From positions 248,001-312,000 of IMG/VR virus record IMGVR_UViG_3300023184_000025: a stretch of DNA of 64,000 nt. One strand, written 5' to 3'. The translations under genes were made by a program, and so were the position numbers. The notes under the pieces are model-generated. The model saw nothing but the letters and a program-made list of their open reading frames with translations, was not told where the DNA came from and ran no database searches. Positions 39,826-61,146 of this stretch are shown here, piece after piece. Positions within the stretch are counted from its first letter, which is position 1, and every line of letters begins with the position of its first letter.

Positions 39826-39922
39826 TTTTATTTTCCTTAAAAAAAGAATGAGTTTTAAATCATTCACTATTATGTATCAGTGTTTGCAACAATGTTAATT
39901 AAAATTGGGGGTATTTTGGTCC

Positions 39923-39947
39923 AAAAAAAACCCGCCGAAGCGGGTTC
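39923..39947 (-). terminator. Intrinsic terminator ending the tmRNA
   Basis: aacccgc-ttcg-gcgggtt + U-tract. Confidence 0.9.
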
Positions 39948-39949
39948 TG

Positions 39950-40222
39950 AGTTTCTGTTACGAGGTATGTCTTACCCTAGACGGCTTTTATCAAGCTGCC
40001 AATGCGAACTGTTCGTCGTTTGCGTTTACGTTTTTTGCTTGATTTACGGTCATCGCCTACCGTGCTGTCCACTCTGTTACTCTTTGCCCTGTCAAAACCA
40101 TGCTCACCCCCGACAAGAATATACTAACCTAGTATACTCTTGGTGGAAGTGCCGGGGCTCGAACCCGGGTCCAAGACAACTTTCTCTTCGCCTCTTCCCT
40201 TTCGGGGTTTACAGCAATATTC
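39950..40222 (-). ncRNA. ssrA: tmRNA, circularly permuted (two-piece); tag ANDEQFALAA
   Basis: T-arm/acceptor ..GGGTTCGAGCCCCGGCACTTCCACCA (ends 40141) precedes 5' GGGGGTG (40111); G3:U70 pair; tag ORF 40023-39991. Confidence 0.93.
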
Positions 40223-40855
40223 TTATTTAATCAATCTACGCTTTTGTAAATTCAATTCTGCTATTTTAGCATCGTCTGGCTTTAGATAGTAATTCTTCTC
40301 ACCATCGTTATACCAGTGTCTACCAAACGCATTGTTGTTTTTATTCTTGCGTAGTTGAGTCCATTCAATTGTTGTTATCCAACCTTCTGGAATTTGTTCT
40401 TTATTATACTTTTTGCGTGATGACAAGTCAACCGCATCTTTACCCACACACCAAACTTTTCCAAACTGCGAATTGTTTTCTTTCTGTTGGTGTTGCTTTT
40501 CAGCAAAGGTCTTCTTACGCTTTTCCATTGCTGAGTCAGTGTTTGCCAAATCACACACCTTCTTTTGATGTTCTTTGTTTACAGAAAAATTGTGTTCAGT
40601 GCGAATACCTGTAAATGGATTTGGGTGTAGTTGATGACGCAACTTTCCCGCTTCTCGTTGTCTTATTCTTACTAATTCTTCTTTTGGGCTTAACTTTGCT
40701 AAACCCTGCCACGCAACATAATCTTGCCAACGACCATATTCTTCATATAACTTGCGATGTGCTTCTGCGTGGTCATCAACAGATAATTCTACAAGATTGC
40801 TTGGATCGTCTGTTCCGCCTGCGTGTTTAGGAATAATATGATGTTTGTGGCTCAT
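40223..40855 (-). CDS. HNH homing endonuclease
   Basis: HHIIPKHAGGTDDPSNLVELSVDDHAEAH; C-terminal repeat modules; TATAAATA upstream. Confidence 0.85.
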   Translation of the reverse strand: MSHKHHIIPKHAGGTDDPSNLVELSVDDHAEAHRKLYEEYGRWQDYVAWQGLAKLSPKEELVRIRQREAGKLRHQLHPNPFTGIRTEHNFSVNKEHQKKVCDLANTDSAMEKRKKTFAEKQHQQKENNSQFGKVWCVGKDAVDLSSRKKYNKEQIPEGWITTIEWTQLRKNKNNNAFGRHWYNDGEKNYYLKPDDAKIAELNLQKRRLIK

Positions 40856-50345: not shown

Positions 50346-50534
50346 ATAAAATAGTTAACACACTCCGAGGAATGTGTGTATTAAAGCACTCTAAAATACT
50401 TAGGCTGCCTGTTCTTAAAGAATGCTTTAATACGCTGTAATTTTTCCCTACACAAGAGTAGTTCCATCCTACAGGCCGCCCATTTGCCCATGTTTAGAGT
50501 GCAGGCTAGGATCTCGTTTCCTATAACACTTTGG

Positions 50535-50708
50535 CTAATTTACACTAAACGTTGACAATTTGGTCAACGCTTCGTGATGTTTTCTAGCACGTTCAAACTT
50601 ATCTTGAATAAGTTTTTGAAGCTGTTCTTTGGACATCTCTCCGAGAGCAGTTTCATAAGCTTGTTCTACGATTCGTTCGTTTAATTTTTTGTAATCTATC
50701 TGTTTCAT
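50535..50708 (-). CDS. 57-aa helical protein MKQIDYKKLNERIVEQAYE.. (not in ORF track)
   Basis: AAGGA RBS right after the attenuator terminator. Confidence 0.65.
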   Translation of the reverse strand: MKQIDYKKLNERIVEQAYETALGEMSKEQLQKLIQDKFERARKHHEALTKLSTFSVN

Positions 50709-50720
50709 TTTTTCCTTTGT

Positions 50721-50760
50721 AAAAACAAAAAACCCCAGGGTGTTTAGTCCTAGGGTCCTT
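50721..50760 (-). terminator. Intrinsic terminator of attenuator 2
   Basis: GGACCCUAGG..CCUGGGGUUU + U-tract. Confidence 0.8.
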
Positions 50761-50781
50761 TTAGAATTTGATGTATTTTTA

Positions 50782-50913
50782 TTACATCTTGTCTCCTACG
50801 GACCCTTGATTTTCTGGAATTGTAATTGCACAGTTAAAATTAAAACCGCGTGACCAGGCAGATGCTGTCTGGAGCATAACGGGTTTTAACGATAACATGT
50901 AATGTTTGTTCAT
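50782..50913 (-). CDS. 43-aa putative attenuator leader peptide MNKHYMLSLKPVMLQTASAWSRGFNFNCAITIPENQGSVGDKM
   Basis: Directly after promoter 50924-50952; contains AGGGUCC complementary to terminator 5' arm. Confidence 0.7.
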   Translation of the reverse strand: MNKHYMLSLKPVMLQTASAWSRGFNFNCAITIPENQGSVGDKM

Positions 50914-50923
50914 CTTAGTTTCT

Positions 50924-50990
50924 ATTGTACTTTATTTATATCTTAAAGTCAACCTTTAAGGTAAAAATGTTGTGTTGTATAGATACAACA
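50924..50990 (-). promoter_or_regulatory. Promoter TTGACT-17-TACAAT with embedded TATAAATA and upstream TGTTG-N8-CAACA
   Basis: Direct motif matches. Confidence 0.75.
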
Positions 50991-50999
50991 CTCCTGAGT

Positions 51000-51074
51000 T
51001 GGTTGCGGGGGAAGGATTCGAACCTCCGTCTTCCGGGTTATGAGCCCGATAGTCTACCACTGACGTACCCCGCG
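51000..51074 (-). tRNA. tRNA-fMet(CAT)
   Basis: C1:A72 mismatch, three G-C pairs in anticodon stem. Confidence 0.92.
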
Positions 51075-51096
51075 GTAAAAGTTAGAGTTTTTATAT

Positions 51097-51172
51097 TGGC
51101 GGTCTTAGGGGGTAACGATCCCCACTCTTACGGCGTGACAAGCCGTCGTGCGTCCATGAACACTTTAAGACC
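51097..51172 (-). tRNA. tRNA-Asp(GTC), atypical T-loop ATCGTTA
   Basis: Loop ttGTCac, G73. Confidence 0.85.
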
Positions 51173-51175
51173 AAA

Positions 51176-51605
51176 TTTTTATAGTCAAGCACCGAGTATG
51201 CCAATTTAGGAGTCCGGTGCTTCCGTTCCAAAGCCGATGCAGTTATATCAGGATCCGCCTCCGGCCGATGGGACCCGAATAGTGTATGCGTCCATACACG
51301 ATACCTTATCGATGCTTGACTATAAAAACATATTGAAACACACTAACTACCTTGGTATGTACTAAAGTTCATAGAACCGCTACGACCCTATCTTTAATGT
51401 GCTTCAATATGCTCTGCATCCCCCGGCGGTAATTATAGAGTATCAAGATACGACGCTATCGTACCCATCACACACTCCTTCCACCCGCTTCCCGACAGGG
51501 ACCGTTCTCGCATTGCTAGCGGCCTTTTGGTTCGAAGACTACCACCCGTACATGTCACTGTACTTCTCATCGTGTGGGTCACACTATCCGGAGACACCCG
51601 GAACG
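51176..51605 (-). ncRNA. Cluster of candidate structured RNAs (stem-closed 51176-51328 and 51329-51411; GC-rich 51412-51605)
   Basis: 16-bp and ~18-bp terminal stems; no credible ORF. Confidence 0.5.
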
Positions 51606-51608
51606 TTC

Positions 51609-51695
51609 TGGTGGATGAGGTTGGACTTGAACCAACAATGCCATTACGACGGAAGATTTACAGTCTCCTGGGGTTACCAATTTTCCTACACATCC
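51609..51695 (-). tRNA. tRNA-Tyr(GTA)
   Basis: Long V-arm, loop ctGTAaa. Confidence 0.9.
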
Positions 51696-51887
51696 AAAAT
51701 TAGGATAAGCTACTTGTTTTCCAAACAAGCCCTTAATTGAGCGGTTACTCTGTCCATCTCTTTTATTCTAATGTCTGTGTGCAGAGAGATACTGCCTATC
51801 AGATTCTGGATTGCTCCGCTAACGGTCTTCTGCCACCGGACCTCTATCGCTAGTCAAGCGCCATTTTAACGAAAATAGTAACGGGAT

Positions 51888-51963
51888 TTGGTACTGGGTA
51901 CGGGAATCGAACCCGTCTTACAAACGTGAAAGGCTTGTGTCCTAACCGATAGACGAACCCAGC
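51888..51963 (-). tRNA. tRNA-Glu(TTC)
   Basis: Loop ctTTCac. Confidence 0.9.
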
Positions 51964-52088
51964 ATAAAGAAAAACCCTATAGCAGTCCAGTTAAGCAACC
52001 GAACAGGGCCGTGTTAAAGAGAGAAGCCACGGTTGCAGGACCTAGTGCTCTTGCGAGGAAGTATCCAGGCGATGTGGCTTCAAAAACT

Positions 52089-52178
52089 TGGCGGAGCGAC
52101 TGGGAGTCGAACCCAGTCAACGCTTTAACACGTTGTACGGATTAGCAATCCGCTGCCTTACCGTTCGGCCACCGCTCC
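52089..52178 (-). tRNA. tRNA-Ser(GCT)
   Basis: Long V-arm, loop ttGCTaa. Confidence 0.92.
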
Positions 52179-52187
52179 AAAAAAAAT

Positions 52188-52425
52188 GCTATATTAAAAT
52201 ACACTAAAGGAACCATTGTGCATCTATGTCTACACTATACGAACGTCTCGTATAGGCCTGCACGGTCATTACTGCCTACATACTCCGCCGCTTCTCTGGG
52301 ATTAGTTCCGTATCATCTAAACGGACCCCGGTTTCATAGACTGTAAGATTGCGTAGGGCGGCCCCTGTGCTCGCGTCTTACAGTCCCTAACGGTGTAGGT
52401 AACCTTTAATACATTTTAATATAGT
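52188..52425 (-). ncRNA. Candidate ~240-nt RNA closed by a ~22-bp stem
   Basis: ctatattaaaatgtattaaagg / cctttagtgtattttaatatag with G-U pairs. Confidence 0.55.
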
Positions 52426-52460
52426 AACCCTTGCGGGTTACTACATAAAAACTCTAAAAT

Positions 52461-52554
52461 TTTTAAAGAACATTGTTGATTTCTCAACGTATGCATCAAT
52501 TATATGACACTTTGCGATTTTTGTCAACTACTTGTTTGTTGTATTTTTACAACA
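52461..52554 (-). promoter_or_regulatory. Consensus promoter TTGACA-17-TATAAT, upstream TGTTG-N8-CAACA, downstream rrn-like boxA TGTTCTTTAAAA
   Basis: Promoter 52499-52527; palindrome 52537-52554; boxA 52461-52472. Confidence 0.78.
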
Positions 52555-52624
52555 CTCTGTTGTTGTCCGGAATTGCTTCCTTCATGTTTCTATTGTACTA
52601 GATCTGCCAATTTTGGTCTACCTA

Positions 52625-52657
52625 TAAAAAGAAAACCCGCCTAGTTGGCGGGTCTTT
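52625..52657 (-). terminator. Intrinsic terminator of attenuator 1
   Basis: AAAGACCCGCC-aacua-GGCGGGUUUUCUUUUU. Confidence 0.88.
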
Positions 52658-52675
52658 GTTGATAGTACTTTCTAG

Positions 52676-52780
52676 TTATCTAGATTTCTCAAGACCCGCA
52701 TCAGACATGTGTTCATAGTCATAACTCACAAAATCTCGTGTGTTACTATTAGTGTGCATAGACAATGGTTGATAGTTCAT
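52676..52780 (-). CDS. 34-aa putative attenuator leader peptide MNYQPLSMHTNSNTRDFVSYDYEHMSDAGLEKSR
   Basis: TATAAT 6 nt before ATG (leaderless); GCGGGUCUU is a perfect 9-nt complement of terminator 5' arm. Confidence 0.7.
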   Translation of the reverse strand: MNYQPLSMHTNSNTRDFVSYDYEHMSDAGLEKSR

Positions 52781-52883
52781 AGTACTATTATATATCCATA
52801 ATCTTTAAAAATTAATTTTTTCCTAGTTTTTTTACCAAAGCAACTACCCGGGTCCAAATAAATAAATTTTTAAAAAGTATCAA

Positions 52884-53588
52884 ATGATCAATACTAATAC
52901 AGATAAAATAATAATTATATGTTATTCTAGTTTTAGCGGCGGAAAATTTTTAGTTAACAGTCTAGGGTTAAGCAATAAAATTGTATTACAAGATATCAAC
53001 TTGGCAACACAGCAAGCAAATGGAAATTTCTCAAAACAGGAAAAGTTTGAATATTTTGTTACAAAATTAAACGAAAATGGACCCACTAAAGAATGGAACG
53101 ATCTTGGACTAGGGTGTTTTCAGTTTTTTGGTGTTCTTGACAAGGAATACTTGCAAAACAAAGTCACTGTAGAAAGATTTGACAACAAAATTTCAAATAT
53201 CATTGACAATGATCTAACATTTTTTCTAGTTGCACATAATTACATTTTTTTGCCAAAATATTTAGAGGTATGGAAGAATGCAAAAATTATAGTGTTTGAA
53301 AACTCTGATTTGTTTATTAAATGGAGAACAAACGGAAAACAGACTGACAATGGTGCGTTTTCAAGAGAGAAATTTTTAGATAAAAATGTAATACACTATT
53401 TTGACAATAATAATTATTTTTCAAAAATCAAGACCCTAGACGAGATTGAAAAAATGCATCAGGTATTAGACTTACCTGACTTTGATAAAGAGTTAGTATC
53501 AAACTACTATGATTTATGGATGAGCAAGTTACTAGAAAATAAAATATACTGGGAAAAAAGTAATAAATCTGGCAGAATCAATTTTTAA
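52884..53588 (+). CDS. Hypothetical protein (sulfotransferase-like N-terminus ICYSSFSGGKFL)
   Basis: AT-rich ORF; N-terminus resembles that of 2347. Confidence 0.55.
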   Translation: MINTNTDKIIIICYSSFSGGKFLVNSLGLSNKIVLQDINLATQQANGNFSKQEKFEYFVTKLNENGPTKEWNDLGLGCFQFFGVLDKEYLQNKVTVERFDNKISNIIDNDLTFFLVAHNYIFLPKYLEVWKNAKIIVFENSDLFIKWRTNGKQTDNGAFSREKFLDKNVIHYFDNNNYFSKIKTLDEIEKMHQVLDLPDFDKELVSNYYDLWMSKLLENKIYWEKSNKSGRINF

Positions 53589-61089: not shown

Positions 61090-61146
61090 ATTATAGCAAA
61101 ATGGGCATTTCCAGTCAACCAAAACCAGTGTTGTTTTTATACAACA
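61090..61146 (-). promoter_or_regulatory. Promoter TTGACT-17-TATAAT with upstream TGTTG-N8-CAACA
   Basis: Direct motif matches. Confidence 0.75.

What the first reader, a model, noticed from the sequence alone, without database searches (positions are those of the whole stretch)
52625..52792. Attenuator 1: leaderless 34-aa ORF with an SYDYEHMSD run upstream of tRNA-Ser(GCT)/Glu/Tyr/Asp/fMet
Seen: ORF MNYQPLSMHTNSNTRDFVSYDYEHMSDAGLEKSR (52780-52676), with TATAAT 6 nt before the ATG. Codons 28-30 read GCGGGUCUU, a perfect 9-nt complement to AAGACCCGC of the terminator. Eight of the nine preceding codons encode S, Y, D, E or M, the amino acids of the five downstream tRNAs. Two Ser codons are AGT, which is read by Ser(GCT). 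A, C, G, I, K and W are absent before the antiterminator. Caveat: two further sigma70-like promoters (52592-52620, 52499-52527) lie downstream of the terminator, so read-through would add to basal expression rather than gate it.
Basis: partly seen in the sequence, partly recalled or inferred. Interest (0 to 1): 0.85.

Follow-up and report, generated by a model that had tools for sequence, protein, structure and literature searches.

The report
Translation-coupled attenuator heading phage tRNAs
A tiny gene in front of a giant phage's tRNA genes overlaps an RNA on/off switch for transcription, and a related switch heads the tRNA arrays of more than 100 other uncultured phages, pointing to an undescribed way for phages to tie tRNA production to how well translation is running.

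Summary
The elements are TATAAT, 6 nt, ATG, a 34-codon ORF, an intrinsic terminator, and a 9-nt complement to the terminator's 5' arm inside codons 28-30. Such a complement arose in 32 of 200,000 shuffles and in no other terminator of the window. Two related lineages keep the ORF frame, the leaderless spacing, an internal hairpin and both switch strands. One has an 11/12 promoter.

A second module of the same design heads the next tRNA cluster. Its family has 109 distinct IMG/VR copies. An ORF crosses the antiterminator strand in 108/108, in varying frames. Both alternative helices covary. tRNAs follow in 81/81 loci, mostly without an intervening promoter.

The best reading is a ribosome-dependent transcription attenuator: fast translation lets the terminator form, and slow or absent translation lets the antiterminator form.

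The codon-to-tRNA matching idea is weaker. Only codons 19-23 strictly match, the match decays in one lineage, and the family shows no such tracking. Two conserved downstream promoters form a self-sufficient unit in other phages, so read-through only adds to tRNA transcription. No transcript data were obtained, and only three lineages carry module 1.

The parts
52787..52815 (-). Promoter P1: -35 TTAATT (52815-52810), 17-nt spacer, -10 TATAAT (52792-52787). A start 7 nt after the -10 would be the A of the ATG, giving a leaderless mRNA.
   Evidence: Sequence. The -10 and the 6-nt spacing to the ATG are identical in all three lineages. L028 has TTGACT-17-TATAAT and L004 has ATAACA-17-TATAAT. No transcript-start data exist.
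52676..52780 (-). Leader ORF: 34 codons plus TAA, with no Shine-Dalgarno sequence.
   Evidence: Frame, length and stop are kept in three lineages with no indels, and dN/dS is about 0.3-0.4 between the window and the other two. No Pfam or PHROGs family matches, and there is no relative among 1.84 billion representative proteins.
52721..52746 (-). Internal hairpin inside the ORF (codons 12-20), 10 bp. It is a candidate RNA-polymerase pause or synchronising hairpin.
   Evidence: All 10 pairs are kept in the three lineages, and the three stem substitutions all preserve pairing. Local fold z-scores are -2.6 to -4.8. The pause function is inferred.
52712..52726 (-). Codons 19-23 (AGU UAU GAC UAU GAA). 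They are read by Ser(GCU), Tyr, Asp, Tyr and Glu, the four elongator tRNAs encoded downstream. A stall here leaves the antiterminator strand free.
   Evidence: L028 keeps the run (SYDYE). L004 has SYNYE.
52691..52699 (-). Antiterminator 5' strand (A), GCGGGUCUU, at codons 28-30.
   Evidence: It is a perfect complement of 52656-52648. It is the minimum-free-energy partner in the naked and the nascent RNA and is invariant in three lineages.
52671..52684 (-). Small hairpin (UCUAG-AUAA-CUAGA) between the two switch strands, with the stop codon UAA (52678-52676) in its loop.
   Evidence: The same feature, a hairpin holding the stop codon, is found in 92 of 108 members of the module-2 family.
52622..52656 (-). 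Intrinsic terminator: 5' arm AAGACCCGCC (B, 52656-52647), loop, 3' arm GGCGGGUUUU (C, 52641-52632), then a U tract.
   Evidence: Bare helix energies are -16.7 kcal/mol for the terminator and -14.5 for the antiterminator. Invariant in three lineages.
52592..52620 (-). Promoter P2 (TAGACC-17-TACAAT, then AGAAAC), downstream of the terminator. A 12-codon leaderless mini-ORF follows at 52585-52547.
   Evidence: Conserved in three lineages. The TACAATAGARAC motif recurs at other promoters in this phage group.
52499..52527 (-). Promoter P3, a perfect TTGACA-17-TATAAT.
   Evidence: Conserved. Equivalent tandem promoters precede the same spacer RNA in five other phages that lack module 1.
52179..52470 (-). 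GC-rich structured spacer RNA between P3 and tRNA-Ser(GCU).
   Evidence: Fold energy -89.9 kcal/mol. It recurs in 14 held loci, nine of them outside the module-1 lineages. No Rfam match. Low RNA coverage with a wrap-around joint.
51000..52178 (-). First tRNA sub-cluster: Ser(GCU) 52178-52089, Glu 51963-51889, Tyr 51695-51609, Asp 51172-51097, initiator Met 51074-51000, separated by structured spacers.

Best explanation
The region 52815-52622 (minus strand) is a ribosome-dependent transcription attenuator at the head of the phage's first tRNA sub-cluster.

Proposed mechanism:
1. A sigma70-type promoter starts a leaderless RNA at the AUG of a 34-codon ORF.
2. As the RNA emerges, GCGGGUCUU (codons 28-30) pairs with the 5' arm of the terminator before the 3' arm is made. 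An RNA that is untranslated, or whose ribosome lags at or before about codon 23, therefore carries the antiterminator, and the polymerase reads on towards the tRNA genes.
3. A ribosome that keeps pace covers codons 28-30. It then sits on the stop codon 12 nt further on. The terminator forms and the roughly 155-nt transcript ends.

The element thus converts translation speed into read-through. Poor translation gives more transcription into the tRNA genes. Because two conserved promoters lie downstream, this read-through supplements the basal tRNA transcription and does not gate it.

Shown here: the sequence elements, their non-random complementarity, their conservation, and the covariation-backed existence of the same design in front of many phage tRNA arrays.
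Inferred: that P1 fires at the AUG, that the ORF is translated, and that termination depends on translation.
For: 1. The 9-nt complement is non-random (32 of 200,000 shuffles). It is unique among about 10 terminators in the window.
2. The antiterminator is the minimum-free-energy fold of the nascent RNA in all three lineages until the 3' arm emerges. At equilibrium the terminator wins, with P = 0.72, 0.98 and 0.98. This is the kinetic-switch energy relation also reported for bmrB, where the anti-terminator is less stable than the terminator (PMC4191407).
3. With the A site at codon 24-25 or later, or at the stop codon, the footprint covers the antiterminator strand. At codon 23 or earlier the strand is free.
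4. The -10, the 6-nt spacing, the ORF frame and stop, the internal hairpin, strands A, B and C and the stop-codon hairpin are conserved in L004 and L028, while codons 5-27 diverge by 22%. L028 has an 11/12 promoter.
5. Independent support for the design comes from module 2 (window 50952-50721) and its 109 distinct IMG/VR relatives.
   - An ORF of 35 codons or more crosses the A strand in 108/108 and stops mostly 14-21 nt later.
   - GGGTCC occupies three different codon phases (63/40/5).
   - The A:B pair is A-U 57, G-C 43, G-U 4, with 4 mismatches. The B:C pair is C-G 45, U-A 28, U-G 35, with no mismatch.
   - A same-strand tRNA follows within 1.5 kb in 81/81 loci.
   - 84/98 have an 11-12/12 promoter before the leader, and only about 25/98 have one after the terminator.
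6. Leaderless spacing of 2-11 nt occurs in 24/106 family members. It also occurs at another strong promoter in the window, at 61095.
Against: - There is no transcript evidence. Metatranscriptome contigs do not cover 52686-52873, although the neighbouring protein gene is also uncovered. No RNA run holds the leader.
- Only three lineages exist, and the switch strands are invariant, so module 1 itself offers no covariation.
- Module 1 is not detectably homologous to the covariation-supported family.
- There is no region that sequesters the antiterminator strand when translation is absent. Untranslated RNA should therefore read through, unlike trp.
- The window's own -35 is weak (3/6).
- Translation of a leaderless ORF in an unknown host that uses Shine-Dalgarno sequences for about 40% of long ORFs is assumed, not shown.
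- P2 and P3 downstream are conserved and sufficient in other phages, so the regulatory gain may be small.
Confidence: 0.5

Rival explanations
1. The attenuator senses the supply of the very tRNAs, or their amino acids, encoded downstream (Ser-GCU, Tyr, Asp, Glu). Ribosomes stall at the matched codons 19-23 when those charged tRNAs are scarce. This gives feedback control of that tRNA cluster.
For: - Codons 19-23 are five consecutive codons read by all four downstream elongator tRNAs, and they occupy the zone where a stall leaves the antiterminator free.
- 5 of 8 stall-zone codons match. The same level is reached in 0.2% of leader x array pairs, in 1.1% of 8-codon windows in this phage's long genes, and in 0 of 82 other arrays.
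- L028 keeps SYDYE.
- By my count from the alignment, the number of matching codons over codons 8-24 stays at 7, 7 and 8 of 17 in the three lineages despite turnover.
Against: - L004 has D21N, S12C, S26C and D27N with the same five tRNAs downstream.
- Met and TCT codons are not read by the downstream tRNAs.
- Codons 19-20 lie in a conserved RNA hairpin, which by itself explains their conservation.
- The module-2 family keeps a conserved peptide core whatever tRNAs follow. Tracking there is negligible, 0.18 against 0.164 when permuted.
- A mixed run with one or two codons per tRNA gives low sensitivity in the attenuation model of PMC1183508.
- With no anti-antiterminator, any delay anywhere in the ORF has the same effect, so special codons are not required.
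Confidence: 0.15
2. An ordinary stand-alone small phage gene. P1, a 34-aa peptide with a function of its own, and a plain terminator that also insulates the tRNA promoters. The upstream complement has no regulatory role.
For: - The ORF is kept open in three lineages, and dN/dS is about 0.3-0.4.
- The unit has its own promoter and terminator. It is absent from other phages that carry the same P2/P3-spacer-tRNA unit.
- Homology in L004 begins right at the promoter, as it would for a mobile gene cassette.
- Gene callers recorded the ORF.
Against: - It leaves the 9-nt complement unexplained, both its chance level (32 of 200,000 shuffles) and its invariance amid 22% local divergence.
- The middle of the peptide is poorly conserved, with 10 of 34 residues changed at 89% DNA identity.
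- Much of the synonymous signal sits in an RNA hairpin.
- No protein family or relative exists.
- The detailed layout equals that of a family whose RNA switch is under selection.
Confidence: 0.2
3. A non-coding small RNA of about 155 nt, running from P1 to the terminator, whose conserved 5' end and 3' hairpins act in trans. The ORF is incidental.
For: - The conservation pattern is high at the 5' end (first 12 nt) and in the 3' 60 nt, with a variable middle.
- It ends in a terminator hairpin with a U tail, as many sRNAs do.
- Sub-threshold Rfam near-hits are to sRNA and leader models and rest on the terminator.
Against: - No indel or stop has arisen in 105 nt across three lineages, though this is only a weak test, roughly a 25% chance by my own rough estimate.
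- The naked RNA prefers the antiterminator, so an untranslated RNA would terminate poorly.
- In the analogous family an ORF spans the switch in 108/108 copies despite frame changes, which a pure sRNA would not need.
- No abundant RNA is seen here, although stable spacer RNAs nearby are very abundant.
Confidence: 0.1
4. Chance juxtaposition. A spurious TATAAT and a chance ORF in AT-rich DNA sit next to a terminator that merely ends stray transcription entering the tRNA region.
For: - TATAAT-like hexamers and 30-40-codon ORFs are common at about 33% G+C. The window has 264 ATG ORFs of 25-60 aa. Promoter-like sites are near the shuffle expectation, 29 found against 24 expected.
- The window's -35 is poor.
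Against: - The block from 10 nt upstream of the -10 to the terminator is conserved as a unit in two other lineages, and one of them has an 11/12 promoter.
- The statistics for the complement and the codon run argue against chance.
Confidence: 0.05

Closest known systems
Leader-peptide transcription attenuators of amino-acid operons (trpL, hisL, pheL, thrL, leuL)
   Same: - A short promoter-proximal ORF.
- An intrinsic terminator whose 5' arm can instead pair with an upstream strand.
- Control codons about 15-27 nt upstream of that strand.
- A hairpin inside the leader that could serve as the pause site.
- A stop codon placed downstream of the antiterminator 5' strand. PMC1183508 describes placing the stop far downstream in region II as one way to obtain low basal read-through.
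- A race between ribosome and polymerase.
   Different: - It precedes tRNA genes of a phage, not biosynthetic enzymes.
- It is leaderless.
- No region 1 sequesters the antiterminator strand, so absence of translation should give read-through, not super-attenuation.
- The candidate control codons are a mixed run, not repeats of one codon.
- Strong promoters lie downstream of the terminator.
- Rfam leader models do not reach threshold. Trp_leader scores 21.8 bits against a gathering score of 41, and the match rests on the terminator.
Ribosome-mediated attenuators that sense translation rate or inhibition (B. subtilis bmrB-bmrCD; PMC4191407)
   Same: - Efficient translation of a leader ORF prevents an antiterminator that is less stable than the terminator.
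- Any slowing of the ribosome favours read-through. In that paper codon optimisation of the leader increased termination.
- The ribosome is the sensor, and no specific amino-acid codon run is needed.
   Different: - bmrB has a 5' UTR and a predicted anti-anti-terminator.
- It controls a drug exporter and responds to antibiotics.
- Here the output would be tRNA transcription in a phage, and no inducer is known.
Head-of-tRNA-array leader element found here (window 50952-50721; 109 distinct IMG/VR copies). No description was found in the literature searches or in Rfam, Pfam or PHROGs.
   Same: - The order of parts is identical: sigma70 promoter, short ORF (leaderless in about a fifth of copies), hairpin inside the ORF, A strand containing GGGUC, short extension helix, small hairpin holding the stop codon, B strand containing GACCC that doubles as the terminator's 5' arm, then a U tract.
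- The genomic niche is the same, at the head of a same-strand tRNA cluster.
   Different: - No detectable sequence homology at DNA or peptide level.
- The family peptide has a conserved core (W..IN..S.DRTPE) that module 1 lacks.
- The family is followed by a conserved 180-nt RNA, while module 1 is followed by a different spacer RNA.
- Most family members have no promoter after the terminator, whereas module 1 has two.
T-box riboswitches
   Different: T-boxes bind tRNA directly, have no leader ORF and control aminoacyl-tRNA synthetase and amino-acid genes. No T-box match was found.

Membership tests
Leader-peptide (ribosome-mediated) transcription attenuator | A short ORF begins close to the transcription start, upstream of the regulated genes. 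| tested here: met
   A 34-codon ORF lies 6 nt after TATAAT, and this is conserved in three lineages. The transcription start itself was not mapped.
Leader-peptide (ribosome-mediated) transcription attenuator | An intrinsic terminator lies between the leader ORF and the downstream genes. | tested here: met
   A 10-bp stem with 6 G-C pairs plus a U tract at 52656-52622.
Leader-peptide (ribosome-mediated) transcription attenuator | An antiterminator helix is mutually exclusive with the terminator. | tested here: met
   A 9-bp perfect complement overlaps 9 of the 10 nt of the terminator's 5' arm. It arose in 32 of 200,000 shuffles, is unique among the window's terminators, and is the minimum-free-energy fold of the nascent RNA in three lineages. 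It is invariant, so no covariation is available.
Leader-peptide (ribosome-mediated) transcription attenuator | A ribosome that completes the ORF masks the antiterminator 5' strand, and a ribosome stalled at the control codons does not. | tested here: met
   In silico geometry only. The strand lies in codons 28-30 and the stop is 12 nt after it. Footprints with the A site at codon 24-25 or later give P(antiterminator) = 0, and at codon 23 or earlier the strand is free.
Leader-peptide (ribosome-mediated) transcription attenuator | The control region holds a run of regulatory codons cognate to the product of the operon. | tested here: inconclusive
   5 of 8 stall-zone codons are read by the downstream elongator tRNAs, with empirical p about 0.002-0.01. 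The match falls to 4 of 8 in L004. Met and TCT do not count. Two of the codons lie in a conserved hairpin.
Leader-peptide (ribosome-mediated) transcription attenuator | An upstream segment (region 1) pairs with the antiterminator 5' strand, so untranslated leaders terminate. The same hairpin pauses the polymerase. | tested here: not met
   A conserved hairpin exists at 52746-52721 but does not involve the A strand. No upstream partner for A appears in any fold. Pausing cannot be tested here.
Leader-peptide (ribosome-mediated) transcription attenuator | The attenuator is the gate for downstream expression, with no promoter between the terminator and the genes. | tested here: not met
   P2 (9/12) and P3 (12/12) lie downstream. 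They are conserved, and in other phages they suffice without this leader.
Leader-peptide (ribosome-mediated) transcription attenuator | Read-through responds to translation rate or to charged-tRNA supply. | not testable with these tools
   This needs reporter assays, in vitro coupled transcription-translation, or end-mapping in infected cells.
Rfam amino-acid operon leader families (Trp_leader, Leu_leader and others) | The covariance-model score reaches the gathering threshold. | tested here: not met
   Trp_leader scores 21.8 bits against 41, and Leu_leader 18 against 50. The alignment rests on the terminator hairpin.
Head-of-tRNA-array leader family (module 2 type, defined here) | Sequence homology to the family profile, at DNA or peptide level. 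| tested here: not met
   nhmmer finds module 2 at E = 4e-21 and nothing at 52.6-52.8 kb. The peptide HMM gives no hit.
Head-of-tRNA-array leader family (module 2 type, defined here) | The architecture: an ORF crossing the A strand, an extension helix, a hairpin holding the stop codon, a B strand shared with the terminator, and a position heading a same-strand tRNA cluster. | tested here: met
   for module 1. for the family.
Head-of-tRNA-array leader family (module 2 type, defined here) | A conserved RNA of about 180 nt lies immediately before the first tRNA. | tested here: not met
   The profile hits 50533-50368 at E = 1.4e-40 but does not hit 52179-52470, which is a different conserved spacer RNA.
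T-box riboswitch | A specifier stem and a T-box sequence, detected by the Rfam model. | tested here: not met
   No T-box match at E up to 10.

The most novel reading that the evidence does not exclude
Large uncultured phages carry a previously undescribed class of leader-ORF attenuators at the head of their tRNA arrays. These measure how well the infected cell is translating and raise phage tRNA transcription when translation falters, for example when host tRNAs are depleted or cleaved. In the window's lineage a second, independently evolved copy has acquired control codons matched to the four elongator tRNAs it precedes. That would make it a direct feedback sensor of those tRNAs' supply.
Probability: 0.15. 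Interest if true: 0.9.

Novelty: new variant of a known kind. Interest (0 to 1): 0.68.

Why it matters
How phages regulate their tRNA arrays is largely unknown. The arrays are usually treated as constitutively co-transcribed cargo that fixes codon-usage mismatch or replaces host tRNAs lost during infection.

A translation-coupled switch in front of the arrays would mean the phage measures translation performance and adjusts tRNA output accordingly. The switch is conserved in more than 100 uncultured phages, both alternative helices covary, and an ORF is always threaded through it.

It would extend leader-peptide attenuation, known for amino-acid operons and some resistance genes, to tRNA genes and to viruses. 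It would also provide a compact, portable sensor of translation rate.

For the specific finding, the codon-matched version would be the first case of tRNA genes being feedback-controlled through the codons they decode. The present evidence leaves that open but unlikely.

Tried and rejected
1. More lineages of module 1. Exact and degenerate DNA patterns were run on the switch arms, the loop, the 5' end, the internal hairpin and the downstream block, in viral, metagenome and genome collections. I also ran nhmmer over all held loci, a cluster look-up and an exhaustive HMMER search with the peptide. Together they gave only the L004 group and L028. The five other hits to the arm pattern are unrelated chance hairpins in GC-rich genomes.
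2. Transcript evidence. Four lake metatranscriptomes show tRNAs and very abundant spacer RNAs but nothing usable over the leader, and the neighbouring protein gene is equally blank. A leader-only query found no RNA run that holds it.
3. Precedent recalled from memory. I remembered that the E. coli tRNA-Phe genes pheU and pheV have a Phe-rich leader and attenuator. In K-12 only about 105 nt separate each gene from the upstream gene. For pheU, the one sequence I read, that gap holds a terminator and a TTGACG-17-TTTAAT promoter and no leader ORF. I dropped this.
4. TnaC-like arrest motif. The family peptide core has W-x2-I-x5-D-x2-P spacing like TnaC, but there is no Pfam match to any leader family. 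I dropped this as unsupported.
5. Homology of module 1 to the module-2 family was not detected.
6. dN/dS as proof of translation. The values of 0.3-0.4 rest on few changes. The synonymous changes at F17 and Y20 are explained by a conserved RNA hairpin. I did not use them as proof.
7. Cultured phages. There is no DNA or peptide match in 50,697 phage records.
8. Literature. Four full-text searches found no description of attenuators in front of phage tRNA arrays.
Full report
CONTEXT

The window is part of a 345-kb uncultured phage contig from a freshwater metagenome, IMGVR_UViG_3300023184_000025. A 262-kb contig is identical over the region. The window encodes GroEL, carbamoyltransferases and a radical-SAM protein. 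It also carries 28 tRNAs and a tmRNA, all on the minus strand. No cultured phage matches at DNA level.

The finding lies in a 260-nt gap between a plus-strand gene starting at 52884 and the first tRNA sub-cluster on the minus strand. That sub-cluster is Ser-GCU, Glu, Tyr, Asp and a CAT tRNA.

THE OBSERVATION

- TATAAT at 52792-52787, then 6 nt, then ATG at 52780.
- A 34-codon ORF ending in TAA at 52678-52676.
- A terminator at 52656-52632 with a U tract.
- GCGGGTCTT at 52699-52691 (codons 28-30), the exact complement of the terminator's 5' arm.

The downstream promoters score 9/12 (52620-52592) and 12/12 (52527-52499).

The complement is not chance. It arose in 32 of 200,000 shuffles of the upstream 150 nt. 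Of about ten strong terminators in the window, this is the only one with such an upstream partner. The S/Y/D/E/M run is also unusual, being the only one among 264 small ATG ORFs.

Two corrections matter for the interpretation. The CAT tRNA at 51074-51000 is a true initiator (C1:A72 mismatch, GGG/CCC anticodon stem), so it does not read the internal AUG. TCT is not read by Ser(GCU). The strict match is therefore codons 19-23 (AGU UAU GAC UAU GAA) plus GAU at codon 27.

STRUCTURE

The naked leader folds into the antiterminator. The bare helices are worth -14.5 kcal/mol (antiterminator) and -16.7 (terminator).

Folding nascent RNAs of increasing length shows the antiterminator as the minimum-free-energy structure in all three lineages until the 3' arm has emerged. 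At equilibrium the terminator wins, with P = 0.72 in the window and about 0.98 in the other two. A less stable antiterminator that can still form first is the energy relation reported for bmrB (PMC4191407). PMC1183508 describes trp attenuation as a race between the ribosome and the polymerase.

Ribosome footprints with the A site at codon 24-25 or later, or at the stop codon, cover the antiterminator strand. At codon 23 or earlier the strand is free.

The stop codon lies 12 nt beyond the strand, in the loop of a small hairpin. PMC1183508 notes that a stop placed far downstream in region II lowers basal read-through.

No upstream segment pairs with the antiterminator strand. Untranslated RNA should therefore read through, which differs from trp.

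COMPARATIVE EVIDENCE FOR MODULE 1

Searches of viral, metagenome and genome collections gave two related lineages. These are the L004 group (five contigs, 89% identical over 730 nt) and L028.

- In L004 homology begins about 10 nt upstream of the -10, and the upstream gene is different.
- All three lineages keep TATAAT-6 nt-ATG, the frame, the length, the stop, both switch strands, the stop-codon hairpin, and promoters P2 and P3.
- L028 has TTGACT-17-TATAAT and L004 has ATAACA-17-TATAAT.
- Codons 5-27 are the most diverged part, 78% identical against about 96% for the flanks.
- The peptides are MNYQSLSMYTKCDARDFVSYNYEHMCNAGLGKSR (L004) and MNYQSLSMYTKRDTRDFVSYDYERMFNAGLGKSR (L028).
- dN/dS is 0.3-0.4 between the window and the others, on few changes.
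- A 10-bp hairpin inside the ORF (52746-52721, codons 12-20) keeps all its pairs. The three substitutions in it are all pair-preserving. This explains two of the synonymous changes and offers a candidate pause hairpin.
- The switch strands never vary, so they are conserved but cannot covary.

No further lineage was found by any route.

A SECOND MODULE AND ITS FAMILY

The gap before the next cluster (tRNA-Asn onward) has the same design:
- TTGACT-17-TACAAT at 50952-50924.
- A 43-codon ORF at 50913-50782.
- AGGGTCC at 50806-50800, complementary to GGACCCT at the start of the terminator's 5' arm (50758-50749).
- The terminator 3' arm at 50740-50733, then a U tract.

A scan for that terminator returned more than 120 IMG/VR contigs, 109 of them distinct. 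The upstream strand was not part of the pattern, so the following results are unbiased.

- In 108/108 copies an ATG ORF of 35 codons or more runs through GGGTCC and stops before the terminator arm. The stop is TAA in 100 and TAG in 8, mostly 14-21 nt after the strand.
- GGGTCC occupies three codon phases (63/40/5). The RNA motif and the fact of being translated are therefore conserved, not the local peptide.
- The variable pair of the antiterminator is A-U in 57, G-C in 43 and G-U in 4, with 4 mismatches.
- The corresponding terminator pair is C-G in 45, U-A in 28 and U-G in 35, with no mismatch.
- A 4-5-bp extension helix is present in 88/108, against 6/108 after shuffling. A hairpin containing the stop codon (paired in 92/108) fills the interval.
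- In 81/81 loci with enough sequence a same-strand tRNA follows within 1.5 kb, usually 250-550 nt away. Usually no tRNA lies upstream.
- 84/98 have an 11-12/12 sigma70 promoter before the leader. Only about 25/98 have one between the terminator and the first tRNA, against 2/98 in shuffles. In most phages the array can therefore only be transcribed through the switch.
- 24/106 have only 2-11 nt between the -10 and the ATG.

This is strong evidence that leader-ORF attenuators control tRNA arrays in this phage group.

Module 1 has the same order of parts and the same niche. It is not detectably homologous to the family.

THE CODON-MATCHING IDEA

For module 1, 5 of the 8 codons in the stall zone are read by the four downstream elongator tRNAs. 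That level is reached in 0.2% of family leader x array pairs, in 1.1% of 8-codon windows in this phage's long genes, and with none of 82 other arrays. L028 keeps 5/8 and L004 drops to 4/8.

Several points weigh against the idea.
- The family keeps a conserved peptide core whatever tRNAs follow. Tracking there is negligible, 0.18 against 0.164 and 0.233 against 0.218 when leaders and arrays are permuted. That excess is small enough to come from shared ancestry.
- Two of the matched codons lie in the conserved hairpin.
- With no anti-antiterminator, any delay in the ORF would have the same effect.

I rate this specific reading at about 0.15.

THE DOWNSTREAM PROMOTERS

P2 and P3 are conserved in all three lineages.

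The spacer RNA that follows them (52470-52179) recurs in other phages. In L078, L051, L103, L086 and L114 it is preceded by two promoters of the same type and followed by Asp-Glu(-Tyr), without module 1. The promoter-spacer-tRNA unit is therefore self-sufficient. Module 1 is a lineage-specific addition, and its read-through can only supplement tRNA transcription.

TRANSCRIPTS

Lake metatranscriptome contigs cover the tRNAs and, at very high depth, two inter-tRNA spacers. They do not cover the leader or the neighbouring protein gene, so the absence is uninformative. No RNA run holds the leader.

KNOWN FAMILIES

- No Rfam family reaches threshold. The Trp_leader near-hit (21.8 bits against 41) rests on the terminator hairpin.
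- The peptides match no Pfam or PHROGs family.
- Literature searches found no attenuator described for phage tRNA arrays.
- A remembered precedent at E. coli pheU/pheV was checked on the K-12 sequence and not supported.

VERDICT

The attenuator architecture is supported, directly by statistics and conservation and indirectly by a covariation-backed family of the same design. The codon-to-tRNA matching is unusual but unproven, and the family does not share it. The regulatory weight of the element is limited by two downstream promoters.

The most likely mechanism is translation-rate-dependent termination (confidence 0.5). The main rivals are an ordinary small gene (0.2), the codon-specific sensor (0.15), an sRNA (0.1) and chance (0.05).

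Noticed in passing
window 50721-50952 (minus strand); L004 6126-6350; L020 8465-8760; about 109 distinct IMG/VR loci (L033-L148): A conserved head-of-tRNA-array element. It consists of a near-consensus sigma70 promoter, a 35-74-codon ORF with the core W..IN..S.DRTPE, and an antiterminator/terminator switch whose two helices both covary. tRNAs follow in 81/81 loci. I found no match in Rfam, Pfam or PHROGs and no description in the literature searches.
   Followed up: yes
window 50368-50533 (minus strand): An RNA of about 180 nt immediately upstream of the first tRNA of the Asn cluster. It is conserved in at least 90 of 98 family loci (nhmmer E down to 1e-40) and has no Rfam match. Its structure and function are unknown.
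   Followed up: partly
window 51464-51558 and 51731-51878 (minus strand): Two inter-tRNA spacers (Tyr-Asp and Glu-Tyr) are covered at very high depth (about 400-2100) by short contigs from four lake metatranscriptomes, 90-95% alike. The corresponding spacer sequences recur in 13-21 other phage loci. They are abundant, stable, conserved RNAs of unknown kind.
   Followed up: partly
window 51696-51888: The window has 193 nt of structured RNA between tRNA-Glu and tRNA-Tyr. In the L004 lineage the two tRNAs are only 5 nt apart. This is an inserted element, and it is one of the highly expressed spacers.
   Followed up: partly
window 52196-52417: RNA contigs from two metatranscriptomes show a joint that goes back 222 nt (52417 to 52196/52203), with 1-3 extra letters, inside the GC-rich spacer before tRNA-Ser. 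This could be a circular or permuted RNA, or a tandem copy in a relative.
   Followed up: no
window 52179-52470; L078, L051, L103, L086, L114: The spacer RNA downstream of P3 includes a GNRA-capped hairpin whose changes between lineages all preserve pairing (two A-U to G-U). It is conserved in other phages, where it precedes an Asp-Glu(-Tyr) cluster behind two tandem promoters.
   Followed up: partly
window 52547-52585 (minus strand): Promoter P2 (TACAAT) is also followed by exactly 6 nt and an ATG. This opens a 12-codon ORF (MKEAIPDNNRVL) that is conserved in three lineages with one replacement and one synonymous change.
   Followed up: no
window ~61095 and ~35503 (minus strand): Two near-identical strong promoters (TTGACT or TTGACC, 17 nt, TATAAT) are each followed by 6 nt and an ATG. 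One opens a 113-codon ORF and the other a 14-codon ORF. Leaderless starts may be a regular feature of this phage.
   Followed up: no
promoters at window 50924-50929 and 52592-52597; L020; many family loci: The motif TACAAT-AGARAC (a -10 plus the initial transcribed region) recurs at promoters across this phage group. It may be a group-specific promoter signature.
   Followed up: no
window 39900-40269 (minus strand): A phage-encoded tmRNA with tag peptide ANDEQFALAA. It matches the betaproteobacterial model (120 bits) and also the permuted-tmRNA model (112 bits). This is a possible host clue.
   Followed up: no
window 50526-50708 (minus strand, approximate): A roughly 60-codon ORF with a good Shine-Dalgarno sequence sits between the module-2 terminator and the conserved 180-nt RNA. 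It would be expressed only by read-through of that terminator.
   Followed up: no
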